A stretch of DNA of 64,000 bases from contig OZ260661.1 in NCBI GenBank assembly GCA_965285935.1, forward strand, positions 128,154,001-128,218,000, written 5' to 3'. This document shows positions 29,111 to 64,000 of this stretch, in pieces (positions within the stretch are counted from its first letter, which is position 1; each line of letters starts with the position of its first letter). The notes beneath the pieces are model-generated. The model worked only from the letters and a program-made list of their open reading frames with translations. It was not told where the DNA came from and did no database searches. The stretch comes from Ophelia neglecta. Lineage: Eukaryota. The position numbers were made by a program, and so were the translations under genes.

Positions 29111-29199
29111 TAACAGGTAGGAAGAAAACGACAGTAAAATACTTTCCTACTGTTAAATTTCCATGTCATCTGAATGTTTTTCCAACCCTCCCTAGGTCT

Positions 29200-29680: not shown

Positions 29681-29867
29681 TAGAGTAGTAGTTTTAGAGG
29701 TTATATGAAGCTTATGATTCGTGTATCTAGAATCTTTATTTCTTATTTAGACTATCCAATGTGGTGTTCTATAAGCATTAAAGGACACGGGGCAGGGGCA
29801 ACACCCGAATGTATAGGAAAGGGAAATGGCAGGGGTTGATGTGGGAAGGCAATGTAGAATTGTGAGG

Positions 29868-32699: not shown

Positions 32700-35600
32700 A
32701 ATTGAAGTATTTTCTATACCAAACTTGGCCTGTAAAAAATATTCTTCAGAACGGTGGGAAACACATTGTTTGTCCAACTATGGCAAAGAATCTTTTTAAC
32801 AATTCTTCATACTAAATGTGTGATCGTAATCATTTATAACACTGATAAGAAAGAATATCCATTTCTAATCTGTATTAATTTCTGAATCATATCTGTTGGC
32901 AGCTACAAAAAGCAATTGTAAAACTCTAAAGCTGTCTTTGATAGCTCGAAAGTCGCATCGAGTATTATGTAGAGTTTGGATAAATATTGAAAAGATTCAC
33001 TATTAGCAAGTAAATTTAGCTGTCATCTCAAATCAATAAACAAACGAGTAAGAGTGACAAATTCTGTTACAACATCATTACGAAGAGCAAGCATTGTGTT
33101 TTTTAACACAGTACGGAGAAAGACGAGCAAGACGTGCGCCAAGGAACTCATATGTTCATTTATATATGAAAGAGATTATTGCAATTGGCTATATAGAAAA
33201 CACGCTTGTTTAATACAAATGAACTGATTATGACTGATTGAATCGCAAACATATGTATAGTTTATTGTTTGTATAATTATGTTCCTTTACGGTAGGGGGT
33301 CGGCTACGCGTTAATCAATATTACAATATCATCAGAAATAATCATTTCTTGTTTCATGTGTTTTAAACGACGTTAGTTATTTACTAGGTGCGCAGTGACT
33401 AATGCTCGGAACATGTTTAGGTATGGTTTTATAAATGATTCCAACTCTGCGTTCTTTAACTGGAAACTTAAATTGGCAGCTGTCGTGTGAGACAAAATGG
33501 ATGTCAGTTTAAATTGCAATGGTCTTTCGCATTTTTCAAATGAAAGACTTCTGGTTCCTATGTGGATGCACTAAGTGGAAGCTACTTCTTTGAATACTAA
33601 TTTGAACGTGGTTATTTCGGGGTTGTCAAATAAAGGCAGGAAGCTCAGCGGATGGTCGTAATGTACTATAAGTCATTCTTCTTCCAATCTATTAAGGAGC
33701 GCTAGGACGTAGAATTGGGTAATTAACCGTCTGGCCATGCACCAACAAAGAAAGCCATTAGGGAACTTAAACCGAAATGAGAACTCGCTGCAAAGAAAAA
33801 TGTAGCCTACTTAGTATATAGTTTCAGTTTATACGAATGTAAAGCAACATTACGAATTAATAAAGTGGACAAGTCAAAATATTTACGCAGGAGAAACTGC
33901 GAGTATTGTTTCTACATTTAAATTCATGGACCTGAGAAGTTATATCCCCATAATTATATTTAAGGTTGTAAAACTTTAACTAAAACATTTTAGAATATAT
34001 CTCGCTTTTCGTGTTCATGTTAAGCTACCAGCCATTACTTTTCTCATTAGTGATAACTAAACCAGTTAAGCAATCATTACAAGATAAACCAGACAGACTT
34101 AATAGAAGGTATTGTATTTAAGCAAGGCAAGCATGTTTTGCAGAAGGAGAAACTCCTCCTTTTTACCATAGCTTCCGTTGACCTGATGGCTTTAACCTTG
34201 AGGTTTGCTGTTTGATATATTTGTATTTTTGTTTTCACGAGTATTCCTGTTGCAGCAAACCTTGGATTATTTTGATCCTATAAAGCCTTGAAGTAATATT
34301 CGGTCGGTAACACTGTGGGACCTGTGAGATGTAGAAAGCGGGCTGTCTTAGCGCCCGAGATGATCGATCATCTACCTAGCCTCTAAGGTCGGGCATCTGG
34401 TGGTCGGCTTCTGAATAATCATATATGTCATTGGCAGGTTTAGTTTGCAAAAGAATGTGCCATAGACGAGCAGCCGTGTCATTATTAGATGCTGAGGAGT
34501 TTGCTGGTTGCGTGTTTTGAAGACTCAAGTTTAAGCTTTATTAAACCATACAATAGTAGTTGCCATGAACTGTTTTAAACTGGTCTTGGAATAGTAAAAA
34601 AAAAGCTGGTACGGGTCCTAATTAATATCGCCCGTTGTTTAATTCCAGAATTACTTATAGGCGTAATACACATGTAGCATGTAGGTTTATTTCATTCATG
34701 AACAATTTAAAGACGATTAACTGATTACTGGACAATGTGCAAAATAGCCAAACATAGCCCTACAATAGTATAAAGTTTATTATGCAAGACATGGTGTTAA
34801 GTATGTTCTTGTGTCTCACTGATATGTTTAGCCACTCTGGCCCCTGATTGGCCATTTATAAGCTTTTAATAACTAATAGATGTTATGTTAAGTGGCCATT
34901 TTAGCCATGGAGCGGATATATATAGACAATACCAAGATACCGAGGAAATGGTGGGAGGCCTATTTTAATTATTTGGTTCGATGTACAAGATATTGATAGG
35001 TCTGATATGCTGAAACGTACATAAATCCCATGGCGTTCGCCCCTGTACGTTCACTCTCCGTTCACTCTTTCACACAATAATGCAATGAGCGGCCTCCGAA
35101 TTCATAAGGACACAACCATGAGCTGAAAGAAATTTTATTTTAGCACGCCAACTTCGTTTTTAACTTCATTTACATAAACAAAAACACCTAACATACAAAA
35201 TCAAAGGTTGAAATAATAATTTGAGATGATTTAAAGCATCATTTTAACATCTACAATAAGAATATCAATTGAATAATAGCTAAATTAATTAATAAATATT
35301 AACACTGATATAATAATAGGTAAAAGAAAGAAAATACCACGTTGTGTGCAATGTTTTGTTAAAGACACCATATACAGTACAACCTTAAATACCTAGGTTT
35401 GGGTTGAATTACTGTGAACATACGGGACCTACTTGTTGAATATTAAATAGCGATTTGGGAGTTGGACATCTTTGCCTATCTGCATATAGGTTTAGACAAA
35501 GTATTTTTAAGTGCGCTCATATTTAGTGTAAATATATTATGTAATCAATTACGATTGTGAGGGCTAGATTTTGCGGCAGTGACTTGCTCATTGTAATCCA

Positions 35601-36868
35601 TGTAGGCATCAGACTAAAATGAAAAATACATACTCGGATATCTCTTTCATACATTAGTTCTCCATGAAATATTTGTTTCTTTCACATTAACAGGTAGGAA
35701 GGAAACACCAGTAAAAAACATTCCTACTGCTAAATCTCCATGTCATCTGAATGTTTTTCCAAGCTCTTCAAACCTTTTGCTGATCACTGTTTATTAAATG
35801 GAAATCAGGCTTTGTGGTTAGAAATGTGGCTGCTGGCTGACAGTATTCAATATTTCAGATTGGTCCTATGTGGTGGAAGAAACCTTGATGGCATTATTCA
35901 TTGCTGCACATCCACTGATGGGTATATAAATGGATTTCATTTTCCACCTCATGATTAAAAAAAACAGCCAATGCTTTTTATCAGCTGGTACAAGATTTTT
36001 TAGCATGTAGTCAGATCCCACTAGAGGTGCTGTTAAGACGTAATATTGAAATAGCATGACGGATGCCAATTTGGGTTAATACATATCCTTAAAGATAAGC
36101 TTCGCAAAAACGCGTGAGAAGTGTTGGATTTTCTGATCCATTTGTAATGTAATGGCCTATTGACAGCCAAGAGTCATCAAATTTACCACGACAAAAGCCT
36201 TTATAGCTTTGAAATGCACGACAATACCTCGTTTATCGGTCGAGCTTGCAACTAGAGTAGTAGTTATAGAGGTTATATGAAGCTTATGATTCGTGTATCT
36301 AGAATCTTTATTTCTTATTTAGACTATCCAATGTGGTGTTCTATAAGCATTAAAGGACGAGGGGCAGGGGCAACACCCGAATGTATAGGAAAGTGAAATG
36401 GGAGGGGTGGATGTGGGAAGGCACTGTATAACAGAAAGCGTCGGGAATAAAGTCTCGGAACAAGTATCCGGAAAATAAAACATAGCAGGAAATAAGGCAT
36501 CTGGAAATAGTACCAGTATCAAGCCAATGTAATTTTTGTATGAATTATTTTCTCATTCCGCCATGTCAATGATTTGTCAAAAAACCTTTGGTAGACTAAC
36601 ACAATAAAAAATGGTGGCCTTAGTATAGCAATTAATGAAGACTTTTAATGAAGGTGTGGTTGGCATACGAACCTACTCCACTAAAACTGAAGAATGCAGG
36701 GAAATTGTTTTTGTCTAGTGTAAGAAAGTGTATAATCTAAATATTTCTGATGTAGAAATATATATGTATATGTTTGCTGATTTTTATTAACTTATAGCTT
36801 AGCATTATAGCATACATATAATATTTTCTCTGTAACTTTACCTCTTTTTTTTCTGTAGGAATATATAT
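32700..36868. repeat. Duplicated block B, copy 2
   Basis: Collinear with B1 and B3; shared ORF-track peptides (MASVMLFQYYV.. at 35866 and 56761). Confidence 0.93.
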
Positions 36869-37213
36869 ATAGATCTTTATTTCCTCCATTTTCTGAAGAG
36901 TACATTAGAAAATAACAAACTATAAGTGTAAATCAACTAAACAGAACATAGTGAAATTATAATCAAGGAACAATATATTTACAAGGTAACGGCCATATAA
37001 CAGGGAGCGATACTAGAATAATACACACGTATAATAAAAGAAAAGCCGGTTCACTTAGTCCACACAGTACTACTCACTACTCAAAAGCATGACCATTGAA
37101 TGTACCTTGCCAGCGATACGTATCACAAATATATATACAATTAGTAAAATCAAGGCGTACAATTATGTGCTGAATTATGACTGTTACAAATATATATTCA
37201 TAAGGTTATTGAT

Positions 37214-45844: not shown

Positions 45845-46581
45845 TCATTCTAAACAGTGTCCCGAAAACTAAGTAAATGTTGTCTGTTTTCCATTTCCCG
45901 TCTGGACCGTCCAGCATCAGTGGCATTATTTCCTTTGAATTCTTCATCATTCGAAACTACATAATGAAAATTTGAGCTTTTGAATCCGCCATTTAACAAA
46001 ATCTTTTACAAATATTACCAAAATACTTAGTTGCAAACTCCCAATAATGGCCATTGCTAGTTGATTACGTCAAGTTATTTTCAAATAAGCATAGTGCATC
46101 CCAGATTGATAGGTCGAAACGTACCGTCATATACGGACCCTTGGTCATGAGATGAGCACTGAAGGAATACATGCCACTAATAGGACACACGAAATGACCT
46201 GTACCCGGGTTGTATCCATAGTGACTTGGAAATCCGCCATTCTCATTTAGGACAAGCCTGCTAAACCGAATTGTCGTCCCAACGCCAAATGCCACTGACC
46301 TAGCTTGGCCTACGCCTAGTTTCTCATAAAAGCCTAAGGTGGAGTCATGTAAAAATATCAGATTTATTGGCATTCAGAATAATTATGCATGGCTACAGTA
46401 AAAGGCTAGCAACCTTTGCGATAGTTTCGAATGAACCAGTGAAAATAATTTGACGACGGAATGTATTAACTGCTTTGTTATACGATTTAAACAATCTGTA
46501 GATATACTGACCTATTTTGCTAGTTTCTGCTCCGCTTACAATAACCGTCAGGAAAACGAAAAGAGCCCAGACTTTAGTCAT
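45845..46581 (-). pseudogene. C1q-domain gene copy G1, inactivated
   Basis: Exons 46581-46512, 46333-46125, 45956-45845; nearly identical to G3, but exon 3 lacks 83 bp (G3 62015-62097) and has TGG>TAG. Confidence 0.9.
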
Positions 46582-47391: not shown

Positions 47392-48155
47392 TTAACATGC
47401 TATGCCTTTCTTCTGCGGTTTTGAAAGGCCTATCATATATTCCATATCAAATACTTCTTCTTAAGTACAATTTTTTAACGACCGTGCACTCAGAATTCTG
47501 AAACTTCCAAGACAACTATTCAACGTGCTGTTTTCTATCAGGAGTGATTAAATAAAGGGGGCTTTTTTGTAGCTTTTGATTAAAAGCTGAGGTGATTGCT
47601 GAGGTACATCTCAAGATAGGACACAACTTTAGAATTACATAACCTTGTTTAACCATAAAATTAACCCAAGTCCTAATTGTGGTGGTGTAGGGCTTTTGGG
47701 GAGAATTTAAAGCTAGGTTTGCACAGGAAGGAGTCACTGCTCAATCGGGATCGGAAGCCTTGGAGAGGGGGGGGGGGGGGGTTAGGCAAGGGAGGATTGG
47801 CTAGAAAATAGTATAACTGGTATCATGGATAGTTTTATAATATATAGTAATATTAGGTATAAAAATATATTTTTCGGCTCTATACCCTTACTGGGAAGTT
47901 TAATGAGTGGCGAGTGGCAAGAGAGAGCAGGAATCGGCTCGGGATCCGATGCGTTGCAGAGTGGCACTCGTGCAGGCCAAACGGAAGTATGCTCTGCAAA
48001 AGAAATGCCACAGAACAATGTAATGTTTGCAGCCAATGTAGACAGCCATTTTCGGTTTTGAGATGTTATACAACACTTTTTGTCCAGATTTGATTTAGCT
48101 TTAGTAGTTATCGTAAATTCATTTATTTATTTATTTATTTATTTATAACTGCTAA

Positions 48156-48630
48156 TAGTTATCTCGTAATAAGGATAAACTAAGTCGTAATAAAGAGATA
48201 GTTATCTCGTAATAACGAGATCCTAAGTCGTAATAACGAGATACTTAATCGTAATAACGAGAACTAAGTCGTAATAACGATATAGTTATCTCGTAATAAC
48301 GATATAGTTATCTCGTAATAACGATATAGTTATCTCGTAATAACGAGATACTAAGTCGTTTTAACGAGATAGTTATCTCGTAATAACGAGATAGTTATCT
48401 CGTAATAACTAGATACTAAGTTGTAATAACGAGATAGTTATCTCGTAATAACGAGATAATAAGTCGTAATAACGAGATAGTTATCTCGTAATAAGGAGAT
48501 ACTAAGTCGTAATAACAACATAGTTATCTCGTAATAACGAGATACTAAGTCGTCATAACGAGATACTAAGTCGTAATAACGAGATAGATATCTCGTTATA
48601 ACGAGATAGTAAGTCGTAATAACGAGATAA
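48156..48630. repeat. Palindromic 21/22-bp two-variant minisatellite
   Basis: Units GTTATCTCGTAATAACGAGATA and CTAAGTCGTAATAACGAGATA, about 22 copies. Confidence 0.95.
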
Positions 48631-49755
48631 TATTTTTTCTATGGTGGCACATATCGGCTTCCGTACTGATCCAGCTTAAATATATATTTTGAAATGCGAA
48701 ATGCTTTCTTTTCCATAACCATGAGGCGTGAAATCGAACCGTCACGGTAGGCCAGACTGCCTGGGAGGGGCTCCCTACTCCTCCAGGAAGTGAGCCTCCA
48801 CACCTCTCCAACTTGGGGAGGGGGGGGGGGCAAAAAGCTAATCCTGTCTGGGTAATATGGTACATTAACAGTAGTGCCCCTCCCCCTCCCCCCCCCCTCC
48901 CCCTCCTTCCTCTTCCCCGACGACAGCATTCTGCTCCCCATGGAATATTGTAGCTGGTATCTTGTTTTATAATAATATTATATATAAATAAAGGAATACA
49001 AATATTGTTTAATGCATTTTTATTGCAAATCATCGACAAAGCGGAAAGAATCAAGCAATAATTAAATGTCTTAAATGTACTCAAAGGGCAAAAATGAAAA
49101 TTAGTCCAGGAACATGAATAGTGAAAGTGCTAAATGTACACGCTTTGGAATTATTTTCCTGACCTTGATCCGCGCGGTCATGTAAACGAACAAATTGAAA
49201 AGTTATTGCATAGCAGTTTTATACGTTTAGCTCAATATCTGTCAAATTTCGTTAAATAATTTATTGCTAAGTCGGCTCGCAATTAGTCAGCAGAAGCTTT
49301 AAAAGATTGATATTATTGTCAAAATATAATTTAATCTAAGCAGGTTATTATAAATTATAGCACTTAGGTCAACTTCAGAAAGTTGCAGACACAAATGTTT
49401 CTCAATATTCGATAAACCCAATCACTGATAACTGTAAAAGGACTTCGTAATCTCGGTGGAATTTTTGGTCCTGAAATGTAAACACAATATTAACAGCAAA
49501 TGAACATACTGCATGCGTACGATATCACCCTTATTAAACCCCTTTCGTTTATCACAGCGGAGGCTTTTACTACTGGTCTTCACTTAATTAAGCTTTTCTC
49601 CCATTGTAGCGATTAAAAATATGTTTCCTAATATCTATATTTTCTGGCACAACCTGATGGAGGCTTATCCACCAAGGCTTTTGAGAATTGACATCACAAA
49701 GATCACATAGTGTATATTTAAAGGTATACCAGTGCAGACTTACATTCGGGGGATG

Positions 49756-51305
49756 TTAATCAGCCCCAACAAGATGTCCAGAGAACCATGACCACATATG
49801 ATGGAGAGTAGCTGAACCACCATGCGTGCCAACGACGAATACATTCTCTCCCCGTTTACAGTGGATGTCTATGGTACCGCCGTCTGTTTTCCATCTTTTG
49901 TCGACCCCTTCCAGCAGCAGATCCATGATATCTTGTGCATCTTTCTTCATTTTAAACTTTAAACAAAAAAATCAGCCATATAACCAATATTGAGCATTTA
50001 TTCCCTTTTATTCGTAAAACATATCCATTCTATACATTTAATTAACCATAAAAACCTGTGAATAATGCAAGAATCAATTATAACCCCCCCACAAACCCAC
50101 CGCCACCGTCACGCCAACCCCACCCCACCACCAGGCATACACGTATTATCTGAAACCTACGCGTTGATAAGTGAGGCAGAGACTACTACCGCCAATTTAC
50201 GGGAATAAAAACAAATAATATAAAATATTTTGTTGCTAGCGCCACCTTCTTTGTGGCGGAAAATATAACAGATAGATAGATTATATATATAACCGATATG
50301 CTATTAACTAAAGACATAAGTTAGAATCGTGAAATGACCAGTTCAAATAAGCCCATGTGGCATGACTACTAAAATCAGGCATACCCGAGCATGACAGGAG
50401 CCATTTGCATGGGGTAAAATGGAGGGCGATCATCCCAGGCGTATAAAAGATGAACCTGTTCGGATGCCGCTAGGCAAGACTTAAACAGTGTAAAGCACAG
50501 CGGGTCCCTTGGTCGAACTTCTTGAACTTAGGACCGGCTGTTTGGGGTCCATTTTATTGTCCAAAAGATACAATATATGGAGATAACGTCTGGGTTATAG
50601 TCCCCAAAGTTTAGTAAAAGTGTTACCCCACCCTCCACTGCAGTGATAAACTCGAAACTTACAGTAGTATTCACATTCAAAATTATACATCGCCAGTTGA
50701 TTATACGGCAGCAAAATACTCTCTGTTTCAATAGGGCTACGAATAGTTTTACAAATTTATATGGCACCAGGTACCTCCATTATCCGATCCCTAGTCATGA
50801 GATGGGCACTAAAGGAGTAAATGCCACTGACAGGACACACGAAATGACCTGTAGCCGTGTTATATCCGTAGTGACGTGGAAATCCGCCATTCTCATTTAG
50901 GTAAACCCTGTCAAACCGGACTGTCGACCCGACGCCTATATTCTTTCGATGAGCTAACTTAGCATGGAAGCCTAAAGTTGATAAGGCCAAAGGTCAGATT
51001 TATTCGTATTCGACCCGACGCCAAATGTCACTGACCTAGCTAGGCCTAGTTTCGCATAAAAGCCTAAAGTTGCGTCATGTAAAATATCAGATTTATTGGC
51101 ATTCAGAATAATTACGCAGGTTAGAACAAATGGCTAACAACTGTTTAATTAGTTTCGAATGAAAATAATTTGACGACGGAATGTATTAACTGATTAGTTA
51201 TAAGATTCAAACAAACTATATATAGATATACTGACCTATTTTGCTAGTTTCTGCTCCGCTTACAATAACCGCCAGGAAAACGAAAAGAGCCCAGACTTTA
51301 GTCAT
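49756..51305 (-). CDS. Secreted globular-head C1q-domain protein G2 (155 aa if the distal acceptor is used)
   Basis: Exons 51305-51236 (signal peptide, G|GTCAGT), 50971-50775 (TTTAG|, GAG|GTAC), 49956-49756 (AAAG|). Phases 1/0 join in frame: MTKVWALFVFLAVIVSGAETSKIGFHAKL..VRFDRVYLN..YNTATGHFVCPVSGIYSFS..GENVFV..WFSGHLVGAD. Confidence 0.8.
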
Positions 51306-52405
51306 TTTGACTGCTATTTCACAGCTGTCAGAATAGTGTGTGTCCCAAAAGTTTGAAGACCGCACGCTATAACCCTTAATAAAATATGTAGGCATAAAAA
51401 ATAAATACCGTGCTTAGTTCATAATATGTAAGTGTATTTACCTTATTCCCGCATCAATAACATTTCGGTCAATACAAATGTCAGTTATGTCAAGAATAAA
51501 GCTTAAAGTAAGCAAGAATCGGTCGCACGCGGTGTCTGAAATCACCAAATCCATATATCGTGTCCTTTGTTAGTAGATTTAACATGATTTTTTGTTAATT
51601 CACATGTGTATATGTAGTTTGCATATCAAAAGTTATTGTGCTAAGACGATTTAACCAGACTATGAAAGCAACATGTATTTTCGTCTCCTGCAAGTGCCTG
51701 TTAACATGCTATGCCTTTCTTCTGCGGTTTTTAAAGGCCTATCATATATTTCATATCAAATACTTCTTCTTAAGAACAATTTTTTAACGACCGTGCACTC
51801 AGAATTCTGAAACTTCCAAGACAACTATTCAACGTGCCGTTTTCTATCAGAGTGATTAAGTAAAGGGGGCTTTTTTGTAGCTTTTGATTAAAAGCTGAGG
51901 TGATTGCTGAGGTACATCTCAAGATAGGACACAGCTTTAGAATTACATAACCTTGTTTAACCATAAAATTAACCCAAGTCCTAATTGTGGTGGTGTAGGG
52001 CTTTTGGGGAAAATTTAAAGCTAGGTTTACACAGGAAGGAGTCACTGCTCAATCGGGATCGGAAGCCTTGCTGCCCCAAATTTGCGATGGGGTAGAGGGG
52101 GGGGGGGTAGGCAAGGGAGGATTTGGTAGAAAATAGTATTACTGGTATCATGGATAGTTTTATAATATATAGTAATATTAGGCATACAAATATCTTTCGG
52201 CTCTATACCCTTACTGGGAAGTTTAATGAGTGGCTAATGGCAAGGGGGAGCAGGAATCGGCTCGGGGTCCGATGTGTTGCAGAGTGACACTCGTGCAGGC
52301 CAAACGGAAGTATGCTCTGCAAAAGAAATGCCAAAGAACAATGTCATGTTTGCAGCCAATGAAGACAACCATTTTGGGTTTTGAGATGTTATACAACACT
52401 TTTTC
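51011..52405. repeat. Partial third copy of block C (C1q upstream region + exon 1 + intron 1), without the Harbinger MITE
   Basis: Collinear with 46280-48085 and 62500-64000. Confidence 0.9.
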
Positions 52406-53199: not shown

Positions 53200-53780
53200 T
53201 TTCCTTAAGTATGCTTTTCTCCCATTGAAACAATTGGAACCAAAACATATACCTTTTTGCAAATATTCGTTGGCACAACCTGATGTACGCTGTTTGCACA
53301 CAACCGTTGTAGACTTTTGATCAAAAGGAGTCACATAATATATATAGTGCACAGACTTCCGTTCTTCCATATACGAGCCCTTGGACATGACATTAGTACT
53401 AAAGGAGTACATCCCACCGAAAAGACAGACAAAATGACCTGTGCTCGGGTTATATCCATATACTCTAGGAAGTCCGCCATTTTTATTTAGGTAAACTGTG
53501 CTAAACGGGACTGTTGCCCCGACGCCTGTCATCTTTGAAGGTGCTAACTTAGCATGAAAGCTAAGTTGATTAATGGAAGTGGTCAGATTTATTAGCATCC
53601 AAATTAATGACCCAGTCTATAGGAAATGCCACGCAAGCACATTTGTAAAATCATAGGGCTAGAATAACTTGACAACGGAATATTTAGGCTTTAAGATTTA
53701 AATGATCGATAACTATACTGACCAATTATGTGAGTCGGTGCTCTGGTTAGGACAAACCCCAATAATACCAATAATACATT
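53200..53780 (-). pseudogene. C1q-domain relic G4
   Basis: Exon-2 homolog at about 53560-53365 (FHAKL..GVGATVPFSTVYLNKNGG..YNPSTGHFVCLFGGMYSFS). Exon-1 remnant with donor G|GTCAGT at 53723 has no in-frame ATG; acceptor is 1 nt out of phase; exon 3 is missing and exon 2 runs into G2-like 3'UTR sequence. Confidence 0.8.
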
Positions 53781-54869
53781 TCTAGAATAATTTTTTCTAT
53801 TTTTGGCTCCGAATAGCCCGAATGGTTAGGGAAGTATTTTAAGGCGAGTCCTTTCCTATTTATTCATAACCTAGCATTCTATCCGGATCCTTCCCGAGTG
53901 CAGCCAAACGTCTCGCTGGTTCAATATCATACCAGATTCTTTTTCGAACACTCTCCGAACGCTTTCCGAGACACTTCCGAATGGTGCAAACGATTCTTGA
54001 GTAGTCAGTTTTCTATCCGTTCGCTTTCTGGCTGCTTCTCGGATCACAAGAATATAAACCGACAACCGAGCGAATAGTTAAAAAAGGGTAAGAATTTTCA
54101 GCATCACAAGAAATTTGAACTGCCACGAAGGAAGGGAAAGAAGGGGGTGCCAAAAGGGCAATAGGAAAGAGGAGGCCGATAGGGGCAGCAGCAGTGTGAG
54201 GTGTATGGTGCAGTGGAGCCGGAGGTGGCCGAAATCCATGCGCCGCCAGACGGACCCGTTCACAGAGATATATGTTATCATATTTTAACATAATATTGAC
54301 AAGGACAATGAATTTTTTGGCTATATTCCAATATGGGCTGCAGACTTATGTCATTCAGGTTCTTCACATTATTTTGTTCACAATAATGTACAAATAATAC
54401 GCTTTCATTGCGTTTTTTAATAATTTCAACCAAATAAAAAGAAATATAAGTGCAAAGTAGTGCCATAGGTGTTCACAGAAAATATGCAAAGATGATAAAA
54501 CAACTATGACTATTTTGCTAATTATTTGTACCTGTTTTCTTAGCTTATGTGGACAGTATTAACGGGAATGTTAGCTCTGTCAAAACACAGGCAACTCCAG
54601 CGTAAAATCGGGAGTGGATACACGGCAGATAAAGGGAAATCATTGATCAAGAATGGTCCATTAATCGGTCTGGAATCTTCAGGAAGCCTAGGGCAGTAGT
54701 ATGCTGGCCGGGAGGAGGAGGGGGAGGCATACCGGTGAATGGGGCATACTGCCGAGGGAGGGGAAGATTTACTACTCCAAATGGGACACAGTAGAAACGT
54801 TCTTCCTCCAGGGGTAGGTTCAATATGGTAGCTACAATCTCAGTTAGGTTTATGATAACATATTTATAC

Positions 54870-57620
54870 AGGAAACCTGAGACTATTGTTTCTACATTTA
54901 AATTCATGGACCCGAGCAGGTATATCTTCATAATTATATTTAAGGTGGTAATACTTTAAATAATAATTTTCGAATATCTCTCGCTTTCCTTATTCATGTT
55001 ATGCGACCAGCCATTACTTTTCTCACTAGTGATAACTAAGCCAGTTTAGCAATCATTACATGATACACCAGACAGTCTTAATAGAAGGTATTGTATTTAA
55101 TCAAGGCGAGCTTGTTTTGCACACGGGGAAACGCCTCCTTTTTAGCATAGCTTCCGTTGACCTGGTGGCTTTGACCTTGAGGTTTGCTGTTTTATATGTT
55201 TGTATTTTTGTTCTCACAAGTATTCCTTTTCTGTTGCAGCAAACCTTGGATTATTTTGATCCTATAAAGCCTTGAAGTTATATTCGGTCGGTAACACTGT
55301 GGGACCTGTGAGATGTAGAAAGCCGGCTTCTGAATAATCATATATGTCATTGGCAGGTTTAGTTTGCAAAAAATATGCCATAGACGAGCCGCCGTGTCAT
55401 TATTGGATGCTGAGGGGTTTGCGGATTGCCTGTTTTGAAGACTCAAGTTTAAGCTTTATTAAACCATACAATAGTAGTTGCCATGAACTGTTTTGAACTG
55501 TCTTGGAATGGTAAAAAAAATGGTAGGGGTCCTAATATCGCTCGTTGTTTAATTCCGGGCAGAATTACACGTAGGCTTAATACACCCAGCATGTAGGTTT
55601 ATTTAATTAATGAACAATGTAAAGACGATTAAATAAATACTGGACAATATGCAAAATAGCCAAACATAGCCCTACAATAGTATTAAGTTTATTATGTAAG
55701 ACAAGGTGTTAAGTATATGTATGTTCTTGTGTCTCACTGATATTTATAACCATGATTGGCCATTTATAAACTTTTATTGATAAATAGGTGTTATGTTAAG
55801 TGGCCTTATTAACGATGAAACGGATATGTAGACAATGCCAAGATACCGAGGAAATGTTTGGGAGGTCTATTTTAATTATTTGGTTCGATGTACAGGATAT
55901 TGAGAGGTCAGGCTGATAGGTTGAAACGTACGTTTACTGTGCGTTCACTCTTTCACACAATAGTCCAATGAGCTGCCTCTAAATACATAAGGACCCAATC
56001 ATAAGATAAAAGACATTTATTGTTTGGCCCGCCAACTTCTTTTTTGACTTCATTTACACAATCAAAAACACTAAAAACACAAAAATGTACATATCAAAAT
56101 CGTTAGAACCAAGTTGAAATAATAATTTGAGATGATATAAAGCACCATATTAACATCTACAATGAGAATGACAAATGAATAATAACAGTAAAATTAATCA
56201 ATGAATATTAACAATGATGTATATAATAAGTAAAGAAAAACACCACGTGGTCTGCAATGTTTTGTTAAAAACACCATAATACAGTACAACTTTAAATACC
56301 TAGGTTTGGGTTGAATTACTGTGAACATACGGGACTAACCACTCTTTGGTGGATGTCAAAATAACGATTTGAGAGCCACTTGGACATCTTTGCCTATATG
56401 CATAGATTCAGACAAAGCATTTCAAGTGCGCTCATATTTAGTGTAAATATATTAAGTAATGAAATGCGATTATGAGGGGTAGATTTTGCGACAGTTTCAT
56501 GCACATTGTAATCCATGTAGGCATCAGACTAAAATGAAAAATATATATTCGGATAGCTCTTTATACATTAGTCATTTATAAAACATGTGTTTCATTCACA
56601 TTAACAGGTACTAAGAAAACACCAGAAAAATACATTCCTACTGCTAAATCTCCATATCATTTTTCCAAGCTCTTCCAACCTCTTGCTGATCACTGTTTAT
56701 TTAATTGAAATAAGGCTTTGTTGTTAGAAATGTGGCTGCTGGTTGGCAGTAGACAATATTTCAGATTGGTCCTATGTGGTGGAAGAAACCTTGTTGTGCA
56801 TTATTCATTGCTGGACATCCTCTGATGGGTATATAAATGGATTTCATTTTCCACCTCATGATTAAAAAAAACAGCCAATGCTTTTTATCAGCTGGTACAA
56901 GATTTTTTAGCATGTAGTCAGATCCCACTAGAGGTGCTGTTAAGACGTAATATTGAAATAGCATGACGGATGCCAATTTGGGTTAATACATATCCTTAAA
57001 GATAAGCTTCGCAAAAACGTGTGAGAAGTGTTGGATTTTCTGATCCATTTGTAATGTAATGGCCTATTGACAGCCAAGAGTCATCAAATTTACCACGACA
57101 AAAGCCTTTATAGCTTTGAAATGCACGACAATACCTCGTTTATCGGTCGAGCTTGGAACTAGAGTAGTAGTTTTAGATGTTATATGAAGCTTATGATTCG
57201 TGTATATAGAATCTTTATTTCTTATTTAGACTATCCAATGTGGTGTTCTATAAGCATTAAAGGACGAGAGGCAGGGGCAACACCCGAATGTATAGGAAAG
57301 TGAAATGGGAGGGGTGGATGTGGGAAGGCACTGTAGAACAGAAAGCATCGGGAATAAAGTCTCGGAACAAGTATCCGGAAAAAAAAACATAGCAGGAAAT
57401 AAGGCATCTAGAAATAGTAGCAGTTTCAAGCCAATGTAATTTTTGTATGATTTTTTTTTCTCATTTCGCCATGTCAATGATTTGTCAAAAAACCTTTGGT
57501 AGACTAACACAATAAAAAATGGTGGCCTTAGTATAGCAATTAATGAAGACTTTTAATGAAGGTGTGGTTGGCATACGAACCTACTCCACTAAAACTGAAG
57601 AATGCAGGGAAATTGTTTTT
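54870..57620. repeat. Duplicated block B, copy 3 (lacks the first 1.2 kb)
   Basis: Collinear with 26361 onward and 33889 onward. Confidence 0.93.
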
Positions 57621-58120
57621 GTCTAGTGTTAGAAAGCGTATAATCATAAATATTTGTCTGGTGCAGAAATTTAAATGTATACAATGGTTGATTTTTATTA
57701 ACTTCTAGCTTGGAATTATAGCATACATGTATTATTTTCTCTGTAACTTTCCCTCTTTTTTCAGTAGGAATATATAGTATTAGCAGCCAATGTAATTTTT
57801 GTATGATTTTTCTCCTTCCGCCATGTCAAAAAACCTTTGGTAAACCAACCCATTAAAAATGGTAGCCTTAGTATAGCACTTACAAAGACTATTAATGAAG
57901 ATATGGTTGGCATAAGAACTTACCCTACTAAAACTGAAGAATGTAGGGAAATTTCTTGTTTTCTAGAGTAAGAAAGCATATAATCCTAAATATTTGTCTG
58001 ATGTAGAAATATATATGTATATGTTTGTTGATTTTTATTAACTTCCAGCTAAGCATTATAGCATAGGCCTACATGTAATATTTTCTCTGTAACTTTCCCC
58101 TATTTTTAGGAATATATAGT
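57429..58120. repeat. Diverged local tandem duplication, about 356-bp unit x2
   Basis: AGCCAATGTAATTTTTGTATG starts at 57429 and 57785; single-copy in B2 (36522 onward). Confidence 0.85.
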
Positions 58121-60991
58121 ATTGGTAGAATTTATTCAACATGAGATAAAACAGCCTGTGAGTTGGATGATACAATCTGGAATTACATCGTGGTGGTGCG
58201 AGGAGATGACAACACATTATATGAATTCTTCACTAAGTAAGATTACAAAATCGAGATGTTTAATAGTCAATGATATTACAAGTAGGCTGAGTGAAATATA
58301 TATCTTTTAAAAGCTCACTGGACGAGAAATAATCCACAAAATCATCACTTGACTTGCGATGTAAGTAACTATCTATTATTTTGGTTGTGCTTTTTTTATA
58401 TATATATAAATTGCCAAATTAGTCAAAGCTTTGACATTGATATATTGCATCAACAAAATATACTTCTGATAACTGGGTCTACTACTATAAAATCTGGGTA
58501 TATACCTAGCCCTTAACTCATAATAAAAGCACTATTCAACCACAAAATGGTATTCATCCTCTAAATTGTTACACACGATGCATGTTCTGTCAGAGTACTG
58601 GAGAGGCGGTCTACCAGTCTCATTGTGTAAATTATGATTTTTCGTTCGGAATTTACTTATGATTAGAGCTTTATCAGGCCGTAGTTTTAAAATATGAAAA
58701 GGCCTTTCTAAAGGCCTATCTATTTCTACATACATATGACCTCAGCTGGAACTTTCAAAATGTATGCACTACTCTTGGCAATGACAATCAGATAATCTCT
58801 GTTTTAAAATGAACAAAAATACATTCATACTCCCTGCTCCCTGACTAAACCGTACATCCCCAAACCTATATTCACACAACAGATCTCTCACCTGGGTATC
58901 CCAGGTTATTCCTTTGGTCGAATTCTTTAGCGCATTATATAGATTGAAAGGCAATTTATGCTGGTTTAGTTGTAGGGAACTACTTCTTACCAAATCGCCA
59001 TTCCCCCTCCTAGTTCGAGCCCAACCTCAACCCTTCCAGACCGTCATACCTTGTGTACCTGCGTACATTCTTTGTTTTTCATATTTTGTAAAATGTGTGT
59101 GAATATTTCAGCGAACTGTCCCCGGCCACATTGCTCAGTGTTGTTCGTGAATATCTAGAGTCTTGGCCAACTTCTCCTTTCAAATCCGGAAGATCAATGA
59201 ATGTTAACAATATATAGCCCAGCACGGCGGTTTAAAGTGAGAGATTAGCCAAAGAAGCTTCCAGACATTTCCCTATTAAAGGTCAAATTGATTAGCAATC
59301 TTATTCTGTCTCTTGGCCATTCACGTCTTTTCATACAATTTAATTGGGTTTTTCCGCCAGGCGTCAGGGTAACCATCATCGTTTCCTGGGCATGTCCTCC
59401 TTGTTAAAGATTCCGTCGATCTATATGTTAATCCAAACCACTACCTTCCACTAAATGTCAAACACAGTTTGTTTATGAACTCCTTGTGTTTTAATGCGTC
59501 TATCTATATCTATGAGGACATACATAGCCAACAAAACATTGTCAGCAATGGCAGCCTTTCAGATGTCAAAAGTGAGAACTCAGCTTGAAATTCGGTTTCT
59601 TTAGTCCCTTGACGTTTCCTTGTGGCGTCTTGGGTTTCTAGCCTTGAGGATGATGGCTGAAGACGGCATTTAGTCATCCGGTCTGTTGGACAAAGCGTTG
59701 TCTATGAGGCTAGATTGACAAGACTACTGTCATAGTACATGAAATGCTGAACCCGCGGGTTACATGCAGAACCAAACTAACATTTGTTTATTCATAGTCA
59801 TAAGACTAACAACATGTTATCTCGGATTTTTATTAACCATTCACATTCGCTAGCCATCTGCTTTATATGACCGCGAGCGTGTTCCTCGGCAACGTTCAAT
59901 TACTAGTATTGTTCCTGACGAAATAAGGAGCTGGCATATTAATGGTAGTTTTTCGCTGTTTTACACAGAATTCATCTGATATGTCTTGTACTCTTACTGC
60001 CATTGCTACTACGTTCACCAGATTAACATGTGATTCTGTTATTCCCCGCGTAAAGGAGACGGGTAACTTTGAAGATGGGTGACCTTCATACGACCTTCAT
60101 ACGACAAAATAGATTAACCCCAGCATACAGGGTGTGAACTTCGAGACTTGTGGTCTTAGTAAGAGCATGTCCTTTTCTGTCTGAATTAAACAAAATGCTC
60201 GTAGCCTAATGTGTCTTATAAAAACAACGTGTTAAATAATGATTAATTAGAAGAAACAGGTTGGTAACTGATTAAAAATCAGAATAAGAAATATTTATTT
60301 CACCCAAACATCAAAGCATACAATTTATACTAACATTCATATTTAAAATAGGGAAATTATACAAAAAATTAAGCAGGGATGACTTATAATAAGATTTATA
60401 ATACATTTCCAGCCCTAGCGGCGGGGCCACTTTACATTTTGATATATTAGTAGGTAAAAGTATTTTGTTTGTGTGCCCAATGTTAGTCGTATTTTTGTTT
60501 TATAATGTGACAACAAAAGCTGCAAGTTAGCTCGAAGTTATTAAGAAGGCACTTAAAGAGTATGATATTAATGCCAAAATACAATTTAATTTTAGTATAC
60601 TACATATTTATTTTACTAAAATCAGCTTAGGAAAATTGCTGTCCCTATTCAAGATACAAACTCTCCGTACCCTATGGAGAAAATCAATGATTCCTATAAA
60701 AGGATCCAGCCAAGATTGTGGAAATCTTGGCCCTGGAAATATTAACAACGTACGTAATATGTATTAAAGGCTTAGCATAGGGAACTTTTAACCACGTGAA
60801 CATATCTCTACAGATCATATAAACATTAACACTGCTAACCTTCTCCCAAGTATATGCTCTTCGCCAATTCAAAACATTAATACACAGAAAACTAGATCTT
60901 GCTTAAGCATGTTTTTTTTTGTAAAACCTAGATATTTTTGGCGGAAACTATGAGATATTAGTTTTCATAACTCATGAAGAATTAAGATGAC

Positions 60992-61911
60992 TTTAATTCT
61001 CAGTATCCAAGATACCTCAAACTAGTAGTACATGATTTTTCGAACTTCCTGGTTGACCACTCGTTCTCCTGTCACTATGCAGCCCAGGTACCCAGCTTCA
61101 TTGAATGAACTGCTCTTTGAATTTTAGATTCGGAGTTCTATACCAAAATACGAAATATGACCTGGTCGACTTACAGAGAAAGCTGTGGAGATATATGAGT
61201 ATAGCCGTCAGATCATGACATTTCTGAGGCAAACATGAAACTTGTTTACAACATATTATAACATCCATTTAACCTCAACTAACCAAACTTCGCAAAACAA
61301 ATATAAATTTTGCCAAATTTCTAGCCGTGAATGTGGTAAAATAAAAACAAGCACTTTCAACCTTTCAACGTAGTTTAATACCAGGCCAGCGGTGTCCTTC
61401 TTTGGTAAGCTTGATTGGTGTTCACAGGGAGTGGCACAAACCCTCCCGTGTCAATGTGCCTGAAACAAGGGCATCCCTTGATTTCAAAATCTTTTGATAT
61501 GTTGTCCTTTATCAATCGCGCAGCTGCTTTAAAGTTTTAACAACTAAAACGAGTGTCCCATAAACCGCACGTCCTTCTCGATTCGACATGTTTGTAGTAG
61601 AAAATTTGCATATAATATTGTATCGAAATTGTGACTGCTTCATTCTGGCAGTTTGTCTGCTATCTTTATGGAAAACATTGTCCCAAAATATGCATTTGGC
61701 ATGGCTAAATGGCACATTGATCATATTATTAACGCTATTGTGTTTGCATATAGGCTAGAGACGTTTATGAACTTAATTTCTAGGCATATGCCTACTACAA
61801 CCAGCATAACTTCTCTTAGTGTTCGATTCTGGTACTATTAGCGCCGCCGTCGGACATCCATCAGCGCCTCCAAGCGTCTGAAAATGTGTTAACTTGGATA
61901 CTGAGAATTAA
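60992..61911. mobile_element. About 920-bp TIR element, copy 2
   Basis: TTAATTCTCAGTATCCAAG at 60993-61011, inverted at 61893-61911. Confidence 0.75.
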
Positions 61912-61976
61912 CACATTGTAGGCATATATATATAGTTTATATATCAGTGCAAAGACTTACTTCTGTGTGTTTTTTA

Positions 61977-62796
61977 TCATTCTAAACAGTGTCCCGAAAA
62001 CCAAGTAAATGTTGGATGAAGGGTAACTGGACCCTTCGTCCGGCCTTCGACATAGACAGTTTCTCCCTTACGACATTGTATGTCTATGGTCCCTCCGTCT
62101 GTTTTCCATTTCCCGTCTGGACCGTCCAGCATCAGTGGCATTATTTCCTTTGAATTCTTCATCATTCGAAACTACATAATGAAAATTTGAGCTTTTGAAT
62201 CCGCCATTTAACAAAATCTTTTACAAATATTACCAAAATACTTTGTTGCAAACTCCCAATAATGGCCATTGCTAGTTGATTACGTCAAGTTATTTTCAAA
62301 TAAGCATAGTGCATCCCAGATTGATAGATCGGAACGTACCGTCATATACGGACCCTTGGTCATGAGATGAGCACTGAAGGAATACATGCCACTAATAGGA
62401 CACACGAAATGACCTGTGCCCGGGTTGTATCCATAGTGACTTGGAAATCCGCCATTCTCATTTAGGACAAGCCTGCTAAACCGAATTGTCGTCCCAACGC
62501 CAAATGTTACTGACCTAGCTTGGCCTACGCCTAGTTTCTCATAAAAGCCTAAGGTGGAGTCATGTAAAAATATCAGATTTATTGGCATTTAGAATAATTA
62601 TGCATGGCTACAGTAAAAGGCTAGCAACCTTTACGATAGTTTCGAATGAACCAGTGAAAATAATTTGACGACGGAATGTATTAACTGCTTTGTTATACGA
62701 TTTAAACAATCTGTAGATATACTGACCTATTTTCCTAGTTTCTGCTCCGCTTACAATAACCGTCAGGAAAACGAAAAGAGCCCAGACTTTAGTCAT
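61977..62796 (-). CDS. Secreted globular-head C1q-domain protein G3, intact, 157 aa
   Basis: Exons 62796-62727, 62548-62340, 62171-61977 with GT-AG sites, 474 nt in frame: signal peptide MTKVWALFVFLTVIVSG, then GFYEKL..IRFSRLVLN..YNPGTGHFVCPISGMYSFS..GETVYV..WFSGHCLE (gC1q aromatic motifs; no collagen tail). Confidence 0.9.
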
Positions 62797-63198
62797 TTTG
62801 ACTGCTATTTCACAGCTGTCAGAATAGTGTGTGTCCCAAAAGATTGAAGACCGCACGCTATATCCCTTAATAATAAAATATGTAGGCATAACAACTAAAT
62901 ACCGTGCTTATAAGTTCATAATAAGTAAGTGTATTTACCTTATTCCCTCATCAATAACATTTCGGTCAATACAAATGTCAGTTATGCCAATATTAAAGCT
63001 TAAAGGAAGCAAGAATCGGTTGCACGCGGTGTCTGAAATCACCAAATCCATATATCGTGTCCTTTGTTAGTAGATTTAACATGATTTTTTGTTAATTCAC
63101 ATGTGTATATGTAGTTTGCATATCAAGTTATTGTGCTAATACGATTTAACCAGACTATGAAAGCAACATGTATTTTCGTCTCCTTAAAGTGCCTGTTA

Positions 63199-63540
63199 GG
63201 GACGGAACATTCAATATCTGGGGGGGGGGGGGGGGGGGCGACAATTTAAAAAAAAAATTGTTTGTTTCTGGTTATGCATAAAGAAAATTGTTTGTTTCTG
63301 ACTCTGGAAAAAATAAATTGTTTGTCTGACGGCCAAATAATGACTTAACACATAGGGTATACAAGTTTGATCAAGGCTAGGGAAAAAATATTTGACAGAG
63401 ATTTCTTAGAAAAAAAAATTGTTTGCTTCCCAGATAGGAAAAAATAAATTGTTTGTTTGTCCAAAGATAGAATTTTTTTGTTTCACTAGAAAATATTTTG
63501 TCGCCCCCCCCCCCCCCCCAAATATCTAATGATGCGTCCC
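63199..63540. mobile_element. PIF/Harbinger MITE, copy 2 (internally deleted)
   Basis: Same TIRs and TTA TSD at the paralogous position; shorter than copy 1. Confidence 0.9.
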
Positions 63541-64000
63541 TTAACATGCTATGCCTTTCTTCTGCGGTTTTTAAAGGCCTATCATATATTCCATATCAAA
63601 TACTTCTTCTTAAGTACAATTTTTTAACGACCGTGCACTCAGAATTCTGAAACTTCCAAGACAACTATTCACATAACCTTGTTTAACCATAAAATTAACC
63701 CAAGTCCTAATTGTGGTGGTGTAGGGCTTTTGGGGAAAATTTAAAGCTAGGTTTACACAGGAAGGAGTCACTGCTCAATCGGGATCGGAAGCCTTGCTGC
63801 CCCAAATTTGCGATGGGGTAGAGGGGGGGGGGGAGTAGGCAAGGGAGGATTTGGTAGAAAATAGTATAACTGGTATCATGGATAGTTTCATAATATATAG
63901 TTATATTAGGTATACAAATATCTTTTGGCTCTATACCCTTACTGGGAAGTTTAATGAGTAGCGAGTGGCAAGGGAGAGCAGGAATCGGCTCGGGGTCCGA

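What the first reader, a model, noticed from the sequence alone, without database searches (positions are those of the whole stretch)
50924..51305. Chimeric C1q gene with two tandem acceptors: the distal acceptor's TAG is the stop codon of the proximal isoform
Seen: the G2 upstream region, exon 1 and intron 1 are G1/G3-type (signal exon 22/24 aa identical to G3) and continue into a 53-bp stub of G1/G3-like exon 2. The sequence then switches to the intron end and exon 2 of a divergent GFHAKL-type paralog. A 13-bp direct repeat TCGACCCGACGCC (50924-50936, 51010-51022) marks the junction. Splicing to the first AG (51065-51064) reads GFYAKLGLARSVTFGVGSNTNKSDLWPYQL and stops at TAG 50974-50972, which is the second acceptor. 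Splicing 92 nt further gives a full 155-aa protein. Inference: a promoter/signal-peptide swap that created a possible splice/NMD on-off switch, or else killed the gene.
Basis: partly seen in the sequence, partly recalled or inferred. Interest (0 to 1): 0.75.

Follow-up and report, generated by a model that had tools for sequence, protein, structure and literature searches.

The report
Fused C1q gene with two acceptors
One gene in a cluster of secreted C1q immune-lectin genes is a real fusion of two neighbouring family members that kept two competing splice sites, but whether it still makes protein is not known.

Summary
G2 (minus strand, 51305-49756) is a DNA-level chimera. From the upstream region through exon 1, intron 1 and 54 nt of exon 2 it is 89-98% identical to G1/G3, and that similarity stops at 51010. 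From 51009 on (38-nt intron tail, exon 2, intron 2, exon 3, 1.1 kb of 3' flank) it is about 91% identical to G5, a paralog 7 kb beyond the window's end. The 13-mer is the conserved exon-2 motif, present once per gene and twice in G2. The joint is out of register by 92 nt with about 1 nt of microhomology. I read it as a non-homologous deletion between neighbouring genes of the array, not an in-register crossover.

Each acceptor has its own CTGAY branch-like motif 23-24 nt upstream, a pyrimidine tract and an identical CAACTTTAG|GCTT core. The first gives a stop at TAG 50974-50972; the second gives 155 aa with a full C1q domain.

No RNA run is on record, so splice choice, NMD and any "switch" are untested. 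dN/dS is about 1. Reads also hold an unfused X-type exon 2 with a G2-like start, so the fusion may be polymorphic. This is an ordinary kind of event, a gene fusion in a birth-and-death family.

The parts
51306..52404 (-). X-type (G1/G3-like) upstream region and promoter of G2
   Evidence: 52404-51701 is 93% identical to the region upstream of G1. 51831-51701 is 98.5% and 51703-51010 is 90% identical to G3.
51236..51305 (-). Exon 1: ATG plus a hydrophobic signal-peptide-like 23 aa (MTKVWALFVFLAVIVSGAETSKI) plus the first base of a Gly codon
   Evidence: It is 68/70 nt identical to G3, 69/70 to G1 and 50/70 to G5. Signal-peptide function is inferred; no predictor was run.
51064..51235 (-). Intron 1 up to the proximal acceptor A1 (172 nt). 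Donor TAG|GTCAGT, AG at 51065-51064.
   Evidence: X-type, about 90% identical to G1/G3.
51087..51097 (-). AATAAATCTGA motif 1, candidate branch site for A1 (branch A 24 nt from the exon)
   Evidence: 5 matches in the window against 0.16 expected, all at the same place upstream of a C1q exon-2 acceptor.
51010..51063 (-). Stub of X-type exon 2 (54 nt), ending in copy 1 of the 13-mer (51022-51010)
   Evidence: Alignment A1. The BLAST match to G1/G3 ends at 51010.
50972..51009 (-). Last 38 nt of the Y-type (G5-like) intron 1. Contains motif 2 (51004-50994) and TAG 50974-50972, which is both the stop of the proximal frame and the AG of the distal acceptor A2.
   Evidence: 31 of 31 aligned nt are identical to G5, plus a 7-nt indel. 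See also alignment A2.
50775..50971 (-). Exon 2 as used from A2 (197 nt), Y-type. Copy 2 of the 13-mer lies at 50936-50924.
   Evidence: Pfam C1q 37.9 bits, profile positions 2-55 of 127. After the 13-mer it is 139/148 identical to G5 against 121/149 to G3.
49957..50774 (-). Intron 2, Y-type, with 135 nt (50259-50393) that G5 lacks
   Evidence: The skipping form seen in contigs carries the 9 letters that G5 has there (tables 5 and 5c).
49756..49956 (-). Exon 3 (66 codons plus TAA), Y-type, the C-terminal half of the C1q domain
   Evidence: 180/198 identical to G5 against 130/191 to G3. Pfam C1q 12.4 bits, profile positions 66-127, below the cut-off on its own.
48665..49755 (-). Y-type 3' flank. 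Homology to the G5 flank ends about 48663, just before a 22/43-bp satellite (48155-48629).
   Evidence: There are 71 mismatches in 1060 aligned nt.

Best explanation
G2 is a fusion of two neighbouring paralogs in a head-to-tail array of small secreted C1q-domain genes (signal peptide followed directly by the C1q head).

Origin (inferred). A rearrangement, most simply an interstitial deletion with non-homologous ends, removed three things. These were the rest of an X-type gene (G1/G3-like) from nucleotide 55 of its exon 2, the spacer, and the promoter, exon 1 and all but the last 38 nt of intron 1 of the next Y-type gene (G5-like). The joint is out of register by 92 nt, so the fused gene carries two starts of exon 2. 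Each start has its own complete 3' splice module.

Consequence (shown by sequence). Use of the first module reads 30 codons and stops at the TAG that forms the second acceptor. Use of the second module gives an in-frame 155-aa signal peptide plus full C1q domain.

Interpretation (inferred). The double acceptor is a by-product of the rearrangement, not an evolved switch. Output of protein depends on how often the spliceosome skips the first module. My estimate is about even odds between a partly productive gene and an effectively dead one.
For: Different nearest relatives on the two sides:
- Exon 1 is 68/70 identical to G3 and 69/70 to G1, against 50/70 to G5.
- Exon 2 after the 13-mer is 139/148 identical to G5 against 121/149 to G3.
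- Exon 3 is 180/198 identical to G5 against 130/191 to G3.
- Intron 2 and the 3' flank align only to G5.
- Intron 1 and the promoter align only to G1/G3.

The changeover is sharp. The G1/G3 match ends at 51010 and the G5 match starts at AATACGAATAAATC at 51009.

It is not an in-situ duplication. The two copies share only 64 of 81 aligned nt, which is like the X-versus-Y distance.

The array layout fits a deletion. All six copies lie on the minus strand, and blocks alpha (G1 ~ G3) and beta (G4 ~ G4b) repeat.

Reads support the joint. X1 contig record 6 (194 nt, 50846-51039) has no mismatches across it.

Splice modules. CTGAY lies 24 and 23 nt upstream of the two exon starts. Pyrimidines are 12/20 and 15/20. 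The core CAACTTTAG|GCTT is the same at both, and no AG lies between motif and acceptor. The motif occurs only at these homologous intron ends.

Domain. Pfam C1q scores for the G2 exons (37.9 and 12.4 bits) are no lower than those of intact G5 and G3.
Against: - No RNA data exist here, so expression and acceptor use are unknown.
In X2 and X3 the listed contigs stop at 50984 and 50986.
- The runs come from one sample and may be the assembly's own.
- The unfused parents are not in the assembly, so 'deletion' is inferred from layout. A copy-and-paste event (template switch, or ectopic repair using a G5-like donor) would leave the same joint.
- The unit model needs a second loss near the satellite (48155-48629).
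- dN/dS is 0.91 for G2 against G5. By lineage, G2 has 14 non-synonymous to 4 synonymous changes and G5 has 8 to 2, with 8 ambiguous. That gives no sign of purifying selection, though the same holds for intact G5.
Confidence: 0.7

Rival explanations
1. Regulated unproductive splicing. Both acceptors are used, and the cell tunes the ratio, for example on immune challenge. This would turn a secreted C1q lectin on (distal) or off (proximal, stop codon, NMD).
For: Both 3' splice modules look complete and have an identical core. The proximal stop lies 197 nt upstream of the exon 2/3 junction at 50775, the geometry that triggers EJC-dependent NMD in vertebrates (recalled knowledge). The distal frame is intact and scores as C1q.
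Against: No RNA is available. The arrangement exists in only one gene: stub-like DNA is found only at G1, G2 and G3 in the genome, and G1/G3 have a single acceptor. It is fully explained as a scar of the fusion. There is no sign of constraint on the coding body. How NMD recognises targets in this animal group is not known to me.
Confidence: 0.07
2. Dead on arrival. The fusion made a pseudogene, either because the proximal acceptor wins nearly always or because the gene is silent. The intact distal frame reflects only the youth of the event.
For: Three of the six copies in the array are visibly broken. G1 lacks 82 nt of exon 3. G4 and G4b lack exon 3 and have a 1-nt loss at the start of exon 2. 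dN/dS is about 1. The proximal acceptor is met first and matches the working acceptor of G1/G3 in position and motif. The fusion may be young or polymorphic (loose end at 51010).
Against: The distal tract is richer in pyrimidines (15/20 against 12/20). There is no stop or frameshift in 155 codons. Pfam scores equal those of intact paralogs. [quoted passage not shown]
Confidence: 0.4
3. The same chimera made by copy-and-paste. A 2.3-kb piece of a G5-like gene (from intron position -38 to the 3' flank) was copied into exon 2 of a complete X-type gene by a replication template switch or ectopic double-strand-break repair. It replaced or displaced the X-type 3' half. This differs from the best explanation only in mechanism.
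For: There is no Y-type exon between G3 and G4 where the repeat-unit model would predict one. G5-like homology has a second sharp end at about 48663, next to a satellite. Only about 1 nt of microhomology lies at the joint.
Against: It needs two non-homologous ends plus loss of the X-type 3' half. A single deletion between same-strand neighbours needs one event for the joint. The assembly holds no trace of the displaced X-type 3' half downstream of G2.
Confidence: 0.25
4. Assembly artefact: two paralogs were wrongly joined at the shared 13-mer.
For: The cluster is repetitive. The listed contigs of X2 and X3 stop short of the joint, and the X1 contig has only 30 letters above it.
Against: The window has no N. 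A 13-nt overlap is far too short to mislead a chromosome-scale assembly (inference). The X1 contig 50846-51039 matches without mismatch and contains stub-specific letters, the 13-mer and the G5-type tail in one piece.
Confidence: 0.03

Closest known systems
sghC1qDC genes of bivalves (signal peptide immediately followed by a globular C1q head), expanded by tandem duplication (Gerdol et al. 2019, PMC6835236; passages read)
   Same: The gene is small. One exon encodes a hydrophobic leader and two exons cover Pfam C1q profile positions 2-127. The copies lie in a dense same-strand tandem cluster with very similar paralogs and dN/dS near 1.
   Different: That paper describes in-register duplicates attributed to unequal crossing over. 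'Chimer' has 0 occurrences in its text. Here one member is an out-of-register fusion of two subtypes. The organism of this window was not identified, so 'bivalve' is an inference.
Hybrid genes from recombination between tandem paralogs (haemoglobin Lepore delta-beta, red/green opsin hybrids, CYP11B1/B2; recalled, not checked here)
   Same: The promoter and 5' exons of one paralog are joined to the 3' body of the neighbour, and the DNA between them is lost.
   Different: Those arise by homologous, in-register crossover and keep a single set of splice sites. Here the joint is 92 nt out of register with about 1 nt of microhomology, so an acceptor and the exon start are present twice.
Alternative 3' splice sites coupled to nonsense-mediated decay (AS-NMD / regulated unproductive splicing, as in SR-protein genes; recalled)
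   Same: There are two competing acceptors, and one of them introduces a premature stop well upstream of the last exon junction.
   Different: Known cases are conserved and shown to be regulated. This one is unique to a single recent paralog and is untested at the RNA level.
Hemizygous / presence-absence structural variation of immune genes in molluscs (Calcino et al. preprint 10.1101/2020.09.15.298695, passages read; Gerdol et al. 2020 PMC7653742, listing and start of abstract only)
   Same: C1qDC genes are reported in hemizygous regions. Here reads of the sample contain an unfused X-type exon 2 that the assembly lacks.
   Different: Those papers report whole-gene presence or absence, not a fusion allele. 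My hint rests on one short contig per run from a single sample.

Membership tests
C1q domain protein (Pfam PF00386), sghC1qDC class | Match to the C1q profile above the curated cut-off | tested here: met
The exon 2 peptide scores 37.9 bits (cut-off 23.7) on profile positions 2-55 of 127. The exon 3 peptide scores 12.4 bits on positions 66-127, below the cut-off on its own.
C1q domain protein (Pfam PF00386), sghC1qDC class | N-terminal signal peptide directly followed by the C1q domain, with no collagen or coiled-coil stalk | tested here: inconclusive
   Exon 1 encodes MTKVWALFVFLAVIVSGAETSKI, and the C1q match starts at residue 1 of exon 2. No signal-peptide predictor was available, so the leader is judged by eye.
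C1q domain protein (Pfam PF00386), sghC1qDC class | Expressed and secreted; binds a ligand | not testable with these tools
   No RNA run is on record.
Chimeric (fusion) gene from two paralogs | The 5' and 3' parts have different closest relatives, with a defined breakpoint | tested here: met
   Searches place the switch at 51010|51009.
Chimeric (fusion) gene from two paralogs | The joint is present in raw sequence data, not only in the assembly | tested here: inconclusive
   One of 3 runs has a listed contig across it (X1, 50846-51039, 0 mismatches).
Lepore-type hybrid by homologous unequal crossover | In-register crossover within homologous sequence, leaving one copy of each exon | tested here: not met
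   X exon-2 nucleotide 54 is joined to Y intron position -38. The acceptor and exon start are present twice, and the two copies are only 64/81 alike.
AS-NMD regulated switch | Both splice sites used in vivo and the ratio regulated | not testable with these tools
AS-NMD regulated switch | A premature stop more than about 50 nt upstream of the last exon-exon junction in one isoform | tested here: met
   TAG 50974-50972 lies 197 nt upstream of the exon 2/3 junction at 50775. The 50-nt rule is recalled vertebrate knowledge.
AS-NMD regulated switch | Conservation of the alternative site across paralogs or species | tested here: not met
   Only G2 has the double module. G1, G3, G4, G4b and G5 have one acceptor each. 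Other species could not be examined.

The most novel reading that the evidence does not exclude
The fusion is a young structural allele that still segregates. Reads of the same sample also hold the unfused X-type exon 2. In one mutational step the deletion put a secreted C1q lectin under a new promoter and leader, and it made the lectin's output depend on competition between two equally good 3' splice sites. That would be a ready-made splice 'dimmer' on which selection could act in an immune gene family.
Probability: 0.1. Interest if true: 0.55.

Novelty: new member of a known kind. Interest (0 to 1): 0.3.

Why it matters
It is a clean, base-resolved example of how birth-and-death evolution in an expanded immune-lectin family makes new gene combinations. 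A non-homologous fusion swaps promoter and signal peptide between subtypes, and as a side effect it duplicates a complete 3' splice module. If the gene is expressed, it offers a natural experiment on competition between tandem acceptors and on NMD in an animal group where both are little studied. If the fusion is polymorphic, carriers and non-carriers could be compared directly. If it is silent, it is one more pseudogene in a cluster where half the copies are already broken.

Tried and rejected
In-situ 86-nt tandem duplication: rejected. The two copies are only 64/81 alike, and everything downstream of copy 2, introns and flank included, follows G5.

G4 (in the window) as the donor: rejected. 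It is 78% identical, against 91-94% for G5.

A mechanistic role for the 13-mer, or for the GGC.TCG similarity in G5 intron 1: rejected. A crossover there would give a different joint from the one seen (by reading). The 13-mer's two differences from G1/G3 are most simply ancestral states, since they are shared with G5 and partly with G4.

'G2 ancestral, G1/G3 derived by deletion between the 13-mers': considered unlikely. G1/G3 and G5 each form a coherent type along their whole length, and G4/G4b show the Y-type 5' end with a single acceptor. No outgroup species was available to settle it.

Selection test: uninformative. dN/dS is about 1 in both lineages with small counts, and it measures time since duplication, not since fusion.

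RNA evidence: none could be had.

Literature:
- One search was too broad (21,589 papers) and gave nothing useful.
- 12 papers hold both 'C1qDC' and 'chimeric'. Of the 10 listed, none is by title about chimeric C1qDC genes, and I did not open them.
- So I found no description of such a fusion, but this is not proof that none is in print.
Supplementary File 3 of the Calcino et al. preprint, its list of C1qDC genes in hemizygous regions, might bear on the polymorphism idea.

Pfam and the local tblastn were run exon by exon. For that reason search for homologous proteins, the look-up of encoding contigs, the listing of cluster members and structure prediction were not used. The big protein search was not used because the family was already clear.
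Full report
**What is there.**
The window is G000:C1:128154001-128218000 of a 762-Mb eukaryotic assembly. It has no N. Local tblastn with the three G2 exon peptides, run separately against the window plus 40 kb of flanks, finds six related copies. All six are on the minus strand.

| Copy | Position (window-equivalent) | State |
|---|---|---|
| G5 | exon 1 at 71707, exon 2 71493-71297, exon 3 70243-70046; outside the window, in L015/L002 | complete |
| G4b | 65297-65103 | exon 2 only |
| G3 | 62796-61980 | complete |
| G4 | 53559-53365 | exon 2 only |
| G2 | 51305-49756 | the finding |
| G1 | 46581-45879 | broken |

Exon 2 and exon 3 of G2 match Pfam C1q profile positions 2-55 and 66-127. The scores are 37.9 bits and 12.4 bits against a cut-off of 23.7. 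Exon 1 encodes a hydrophobic 23-aa leader. The genes therefore have the 'signal peptide plus C1q head' design that Gerdol et al. call sghC1qDC in oysters (PMC6835236, passages read). The organism was not identified, so 'mollusc/bivalve' is my inference from this gene family.

**The observation.**
- Exon 1 is 51305-51236, with donor GT at 51235.
- Acceptor A1 has its AG at 51065-51064.
- The frame from 51063 reads 30 codons and stops at TAG 50974-50972.
- The AG of that TAG is acceptor A2.
- Exon 2 from A2 runs 50971-50775, and exon 3 runs 49956-49756 including TAA.
- The distal model counts 155 codons.
- The 13-mer stands at 51022-51010 and 50936-50924.
- With up to 2 mismatches the 13-mer occurs 5 times in the window (0.22 expected; 0 of 100 shuffles reach 5). 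Each time it sits at the homologous place of a C1q exon 2.

The 13-mer is therefore the conserved exon-2 motif. It is present twice in G2 because G2 has two exon-2 starts. It is not a signature of the joining mechanism.

**The chimera.**
BLAST of the G2 region against the window shows 89-98% identity to G1 and G3 from 52404 down to 51010, and the match stops there.

A search of the whole genome with 50790-51009 finds a 92% match just outside the window, which is G5. G2 and G5 then align from 51009/50986 through exon 2, intron 2, exon 3 and the 3' flank to about 48663. Identity is 89-91%, with one 126-nt piece at 99%.

| Part | G2 vs G3 | G2 vs G1 | G2 vs G5 |
|---|---|---|---|
| Exon 1 | 68/70 | 69/70 | 50/70 |
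| Exon 2 after the 13-mer | 121/149 | 122/149 | 139/148 |
| Exon 3 | 130/191 | not compared | 180/198 |

(All.)

G5 has its own exon 1 and a 144-nt intron 1. Its homology to G2 begins at AATACGAATAAATC, 31 nt before its acceptor, which corresponds to 38 nt in G2 because of a 7-nt indel. The two halves of G2 thus have different nearest relatives and the changeover is sharp.

The two exon-2 starts of G2 share only 64 of 81 aligned positions. That is the distance between the two subtypes, so a local tandem duplication is excluded.

**How it arose (inferred).**
The joint links nucleotide 54 of an X-type exon 2 to position -38 of a Y-type intron 1. It is 92 nt out of register with about 1 nt of shared sequence (by reading). 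This is not a homologous, Lepore-like crossover.

A self-comparison shows repeated blocks.
- Alpha: 41865-47522 matches 58287-63671 at 96-98% and holds G1 and G3.
- Beta: 51942-54858 matches 63667-66553 at 86-96% and holds G4 and G4b.

In the direction of transcription the order is G5, G4b, G3, G4, G2(X part)|(Y part), satellite, G1. The X part of G2 lies directly upstream of a Y body on the same strand. The simplest origin is an interstitial deletion that removed the X gene's 3' part, the spacer and the Y gene's 5' part.

A copy-in event (template switch or ectopic repair) would leave the same joint and cannot be excluded. The G5-like tract has a second sharp end at about 48663, next to a 22/43-bp satellite at 48155-48629. 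No Y-type exons lie between G3 and G4.

**Support from reads.**
No RNA run is on record. The three listed holders (X1-X3) belong to one sample and one study, are kept as contigs and look like DNA. Laid on 49700-51700:
- X1 has a 194-letter contig covering 50846-51039 with no mismatch. It contains stub-specific letters, the 13-mer and the G5-type tail.
- In X2 and X3 the listed contigs stop at 50984 and 50986. That is where G2 and G5 diverge by the 7-nt indel.
- X3 has no depth at 51040-51240.

The joint is therefore seen in raw-data contigs of 1 of 3 runs, all from one sample that may be the assembly's own.

**An unexpected hint.**
In all three runs one contig lies on the stub down to 51010 and then continues for 27 letters. 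Those letters are the G1/G3-type continuation of exon 2, not the G5-type tail (table 7). All laid pieces were at least 95% alike. G1 and G3 of the assembly differ from the stub at 3 of its last 30 letters, and stub-like DNA exists only at G1, G2 and G3 in the assembly.

The reads therefore contain an X-type exon 2 with a G2-like start that the assembly lacks. It could be an unfused haplotype of G2, in which case the fusion is still segregating. It could instead be a converted allele of G1 or G3. Hemizygous C1qDC genes have been reported in bivalves (preprint 10.1101/2020.09.15.298695, passages read). I could not resolve this.

**The two acceptors.**
The 11-mer AATAAATCTGA occurs 5 times in the window (0.16 expected). 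Every time it sits upstream of a C1q exon-2 acceptor, and it is also present at G5 and G4b. More distant paralogs (L007-L014) lack it. I read its CTGAY as the branch site; this is an inference.

| Feature | A1 (proximal) | A2 (distal) |
|---|---|---|
| Branch A to exon start | 24 nt | 23 nt |
| Pyrimidines at -22 to -3 | 12/20 | 15/20 |
| Core | CAACTTTAG\|GCTT | CAACTTTAG\|GCTT |
| Other AG between motif and acceptor | none | none |
| Intron length | 172 nt | 264 nt |

Both are complete modules. The sequence does not say which wins.
- The proximal form ends 197 nt upstream of the exon 2/3 junction. That geometry triggers NMD in vertebrates; whether it does so in this animal is not known to me.
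- The in-frame TAG is a roughly 1-in-3 coincidence. A 92-nt shift leads to an early stop in any case.
- A cryptic donor, TAG|GTCAGT at 51037-51030, has the same 9-mer as the intron-1 donor. Used with A2 it would give a 28-nt mini-exon and a 64-nt intron. That form is out of frame and stops after four more codons (by reading).

**Is the gene alive?**
In favour:
- The distal frame is open for 155 codons.
- Its Pfam scores equal or exceed those of G5 (35.5 bits; no match for exon 3) and G3 (30.2 and 12.7 bits).
- Exon 1 is much better kept than its flanks.

Against, or neutral:
- G2 and G5 differ at 36 of 393 coding positions, with dN/dS 0.91.
- Polarised with G1/G3/G4/G4b for exon 2 and G3 alone for exon 3, the G2 lineage has 14 non-synonymous and 4 synonymous changes. 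G5 has 8 and 2, and 8 changes are ambiguous.
- The 3' flank differs at 71 of 1060 positions.
- So there is no sign of purifying selection. [quoted passage not shown]
- These figures date the duplication, not the fusion, which may be much younger.
- Three of the six copies in the array are clearly broken.

I put about even odds on 'partly productive' against 'effectively dead', and about 7% on an evolved, regulated switch.

**Comparison with what is known.**
This is a member of the secreted C1q-head family and an example of a fusion gene born in a tandem array. It differs from classical hybrid genes in being out of register and therefore keeping two acceptor modules. It resembles AS-NMD loci in geometry only.

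In the papers I searched I found no description of a chimeric C1qDC gene with duplicated acceptors. The searches were shallow, and I read only passages of two papers. I class it as a new member of a known kind.

**Rule-bound omissions.**
The spliced protein was never joined for a search, fold or look-up. Family scans and tblastn were done exon by exon.

**Verdict.**
The 'switch' is untested and unlikely to be an evolved device. Interest is modest (0.3) unless RNA or population data show regulated use or a segregating fusion.

Noticed in passing
window 45879-45956 (G1 exon 3), breakpoint at 45882: G1 lacks 82 nt that G3 has (62015-62096). This shifts the frame of exon 3 and removes the C-terminal part of the C1q domain, so G1 looks like a pseudogene although it is 97-98% identical to G3 elsewhere.
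   Followed up: partly
window 53365-53593 (G4) and L015 about 1103-1331 (G4b): These are two copies of a Y-type 5' fragment (exon-1-like end, short intron, exon 2). They share a 1-nt loss at the start of exon 2, and tblastn finds no exon 3. They sit in a duplicated block (51942-54858 matches 63667-66553) just upstream of G2 and G3.
   Followed up: partly
window 51010 (loose end, table 7): Contigs of all three runs continue from the G2-like stub into G1/G3-type exon 2. This is an X-type copy that the assembly lacks. It may be an unfused haplotype or a converted allele.
   Followed up: partly
window 48155-48629: A satellite of about 22 copies of a 22-bp unit (43-bp higher-order period) with internal dyad symmetry. 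It lies directly where the G5-like homology of G2 ends and before the upstream region of G1. It is not found elsewhere in the 104 kb examined.
   Followed up: partly
window 50259-50393: G2 intron 2 has 135 nt that G5 lacks. Contigs that skip it carry the 9 letters G5 has there, so they probably come from G5. The nature of the insert (mobile element?) was not examined.
   Followed up: no
window 51452-51700: In all three runs the only listed contig over the G2 promoter differs from the assembly at 6-7 letters plus a 2-nt gap. It may be another allele or another individual. The assembly's own version was not among the listed pieces.
   Followed up: no
window 51030-51037: A cryptic donor TAG|GTCAGT lies inside the exon-2 stub, identical to the intron-1 donor 9-mer. 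The same sequence occurs in exon 2 of G1 and G3.
   Followed up: partly
window 26609-29859, 33876-36870, 54857-57780: There are three copies (86-93% identical) of a 2.5-3 kb repeat outside the C1q genes. It may be a mobile element or part of older segmental duplications.
   Followed up: no
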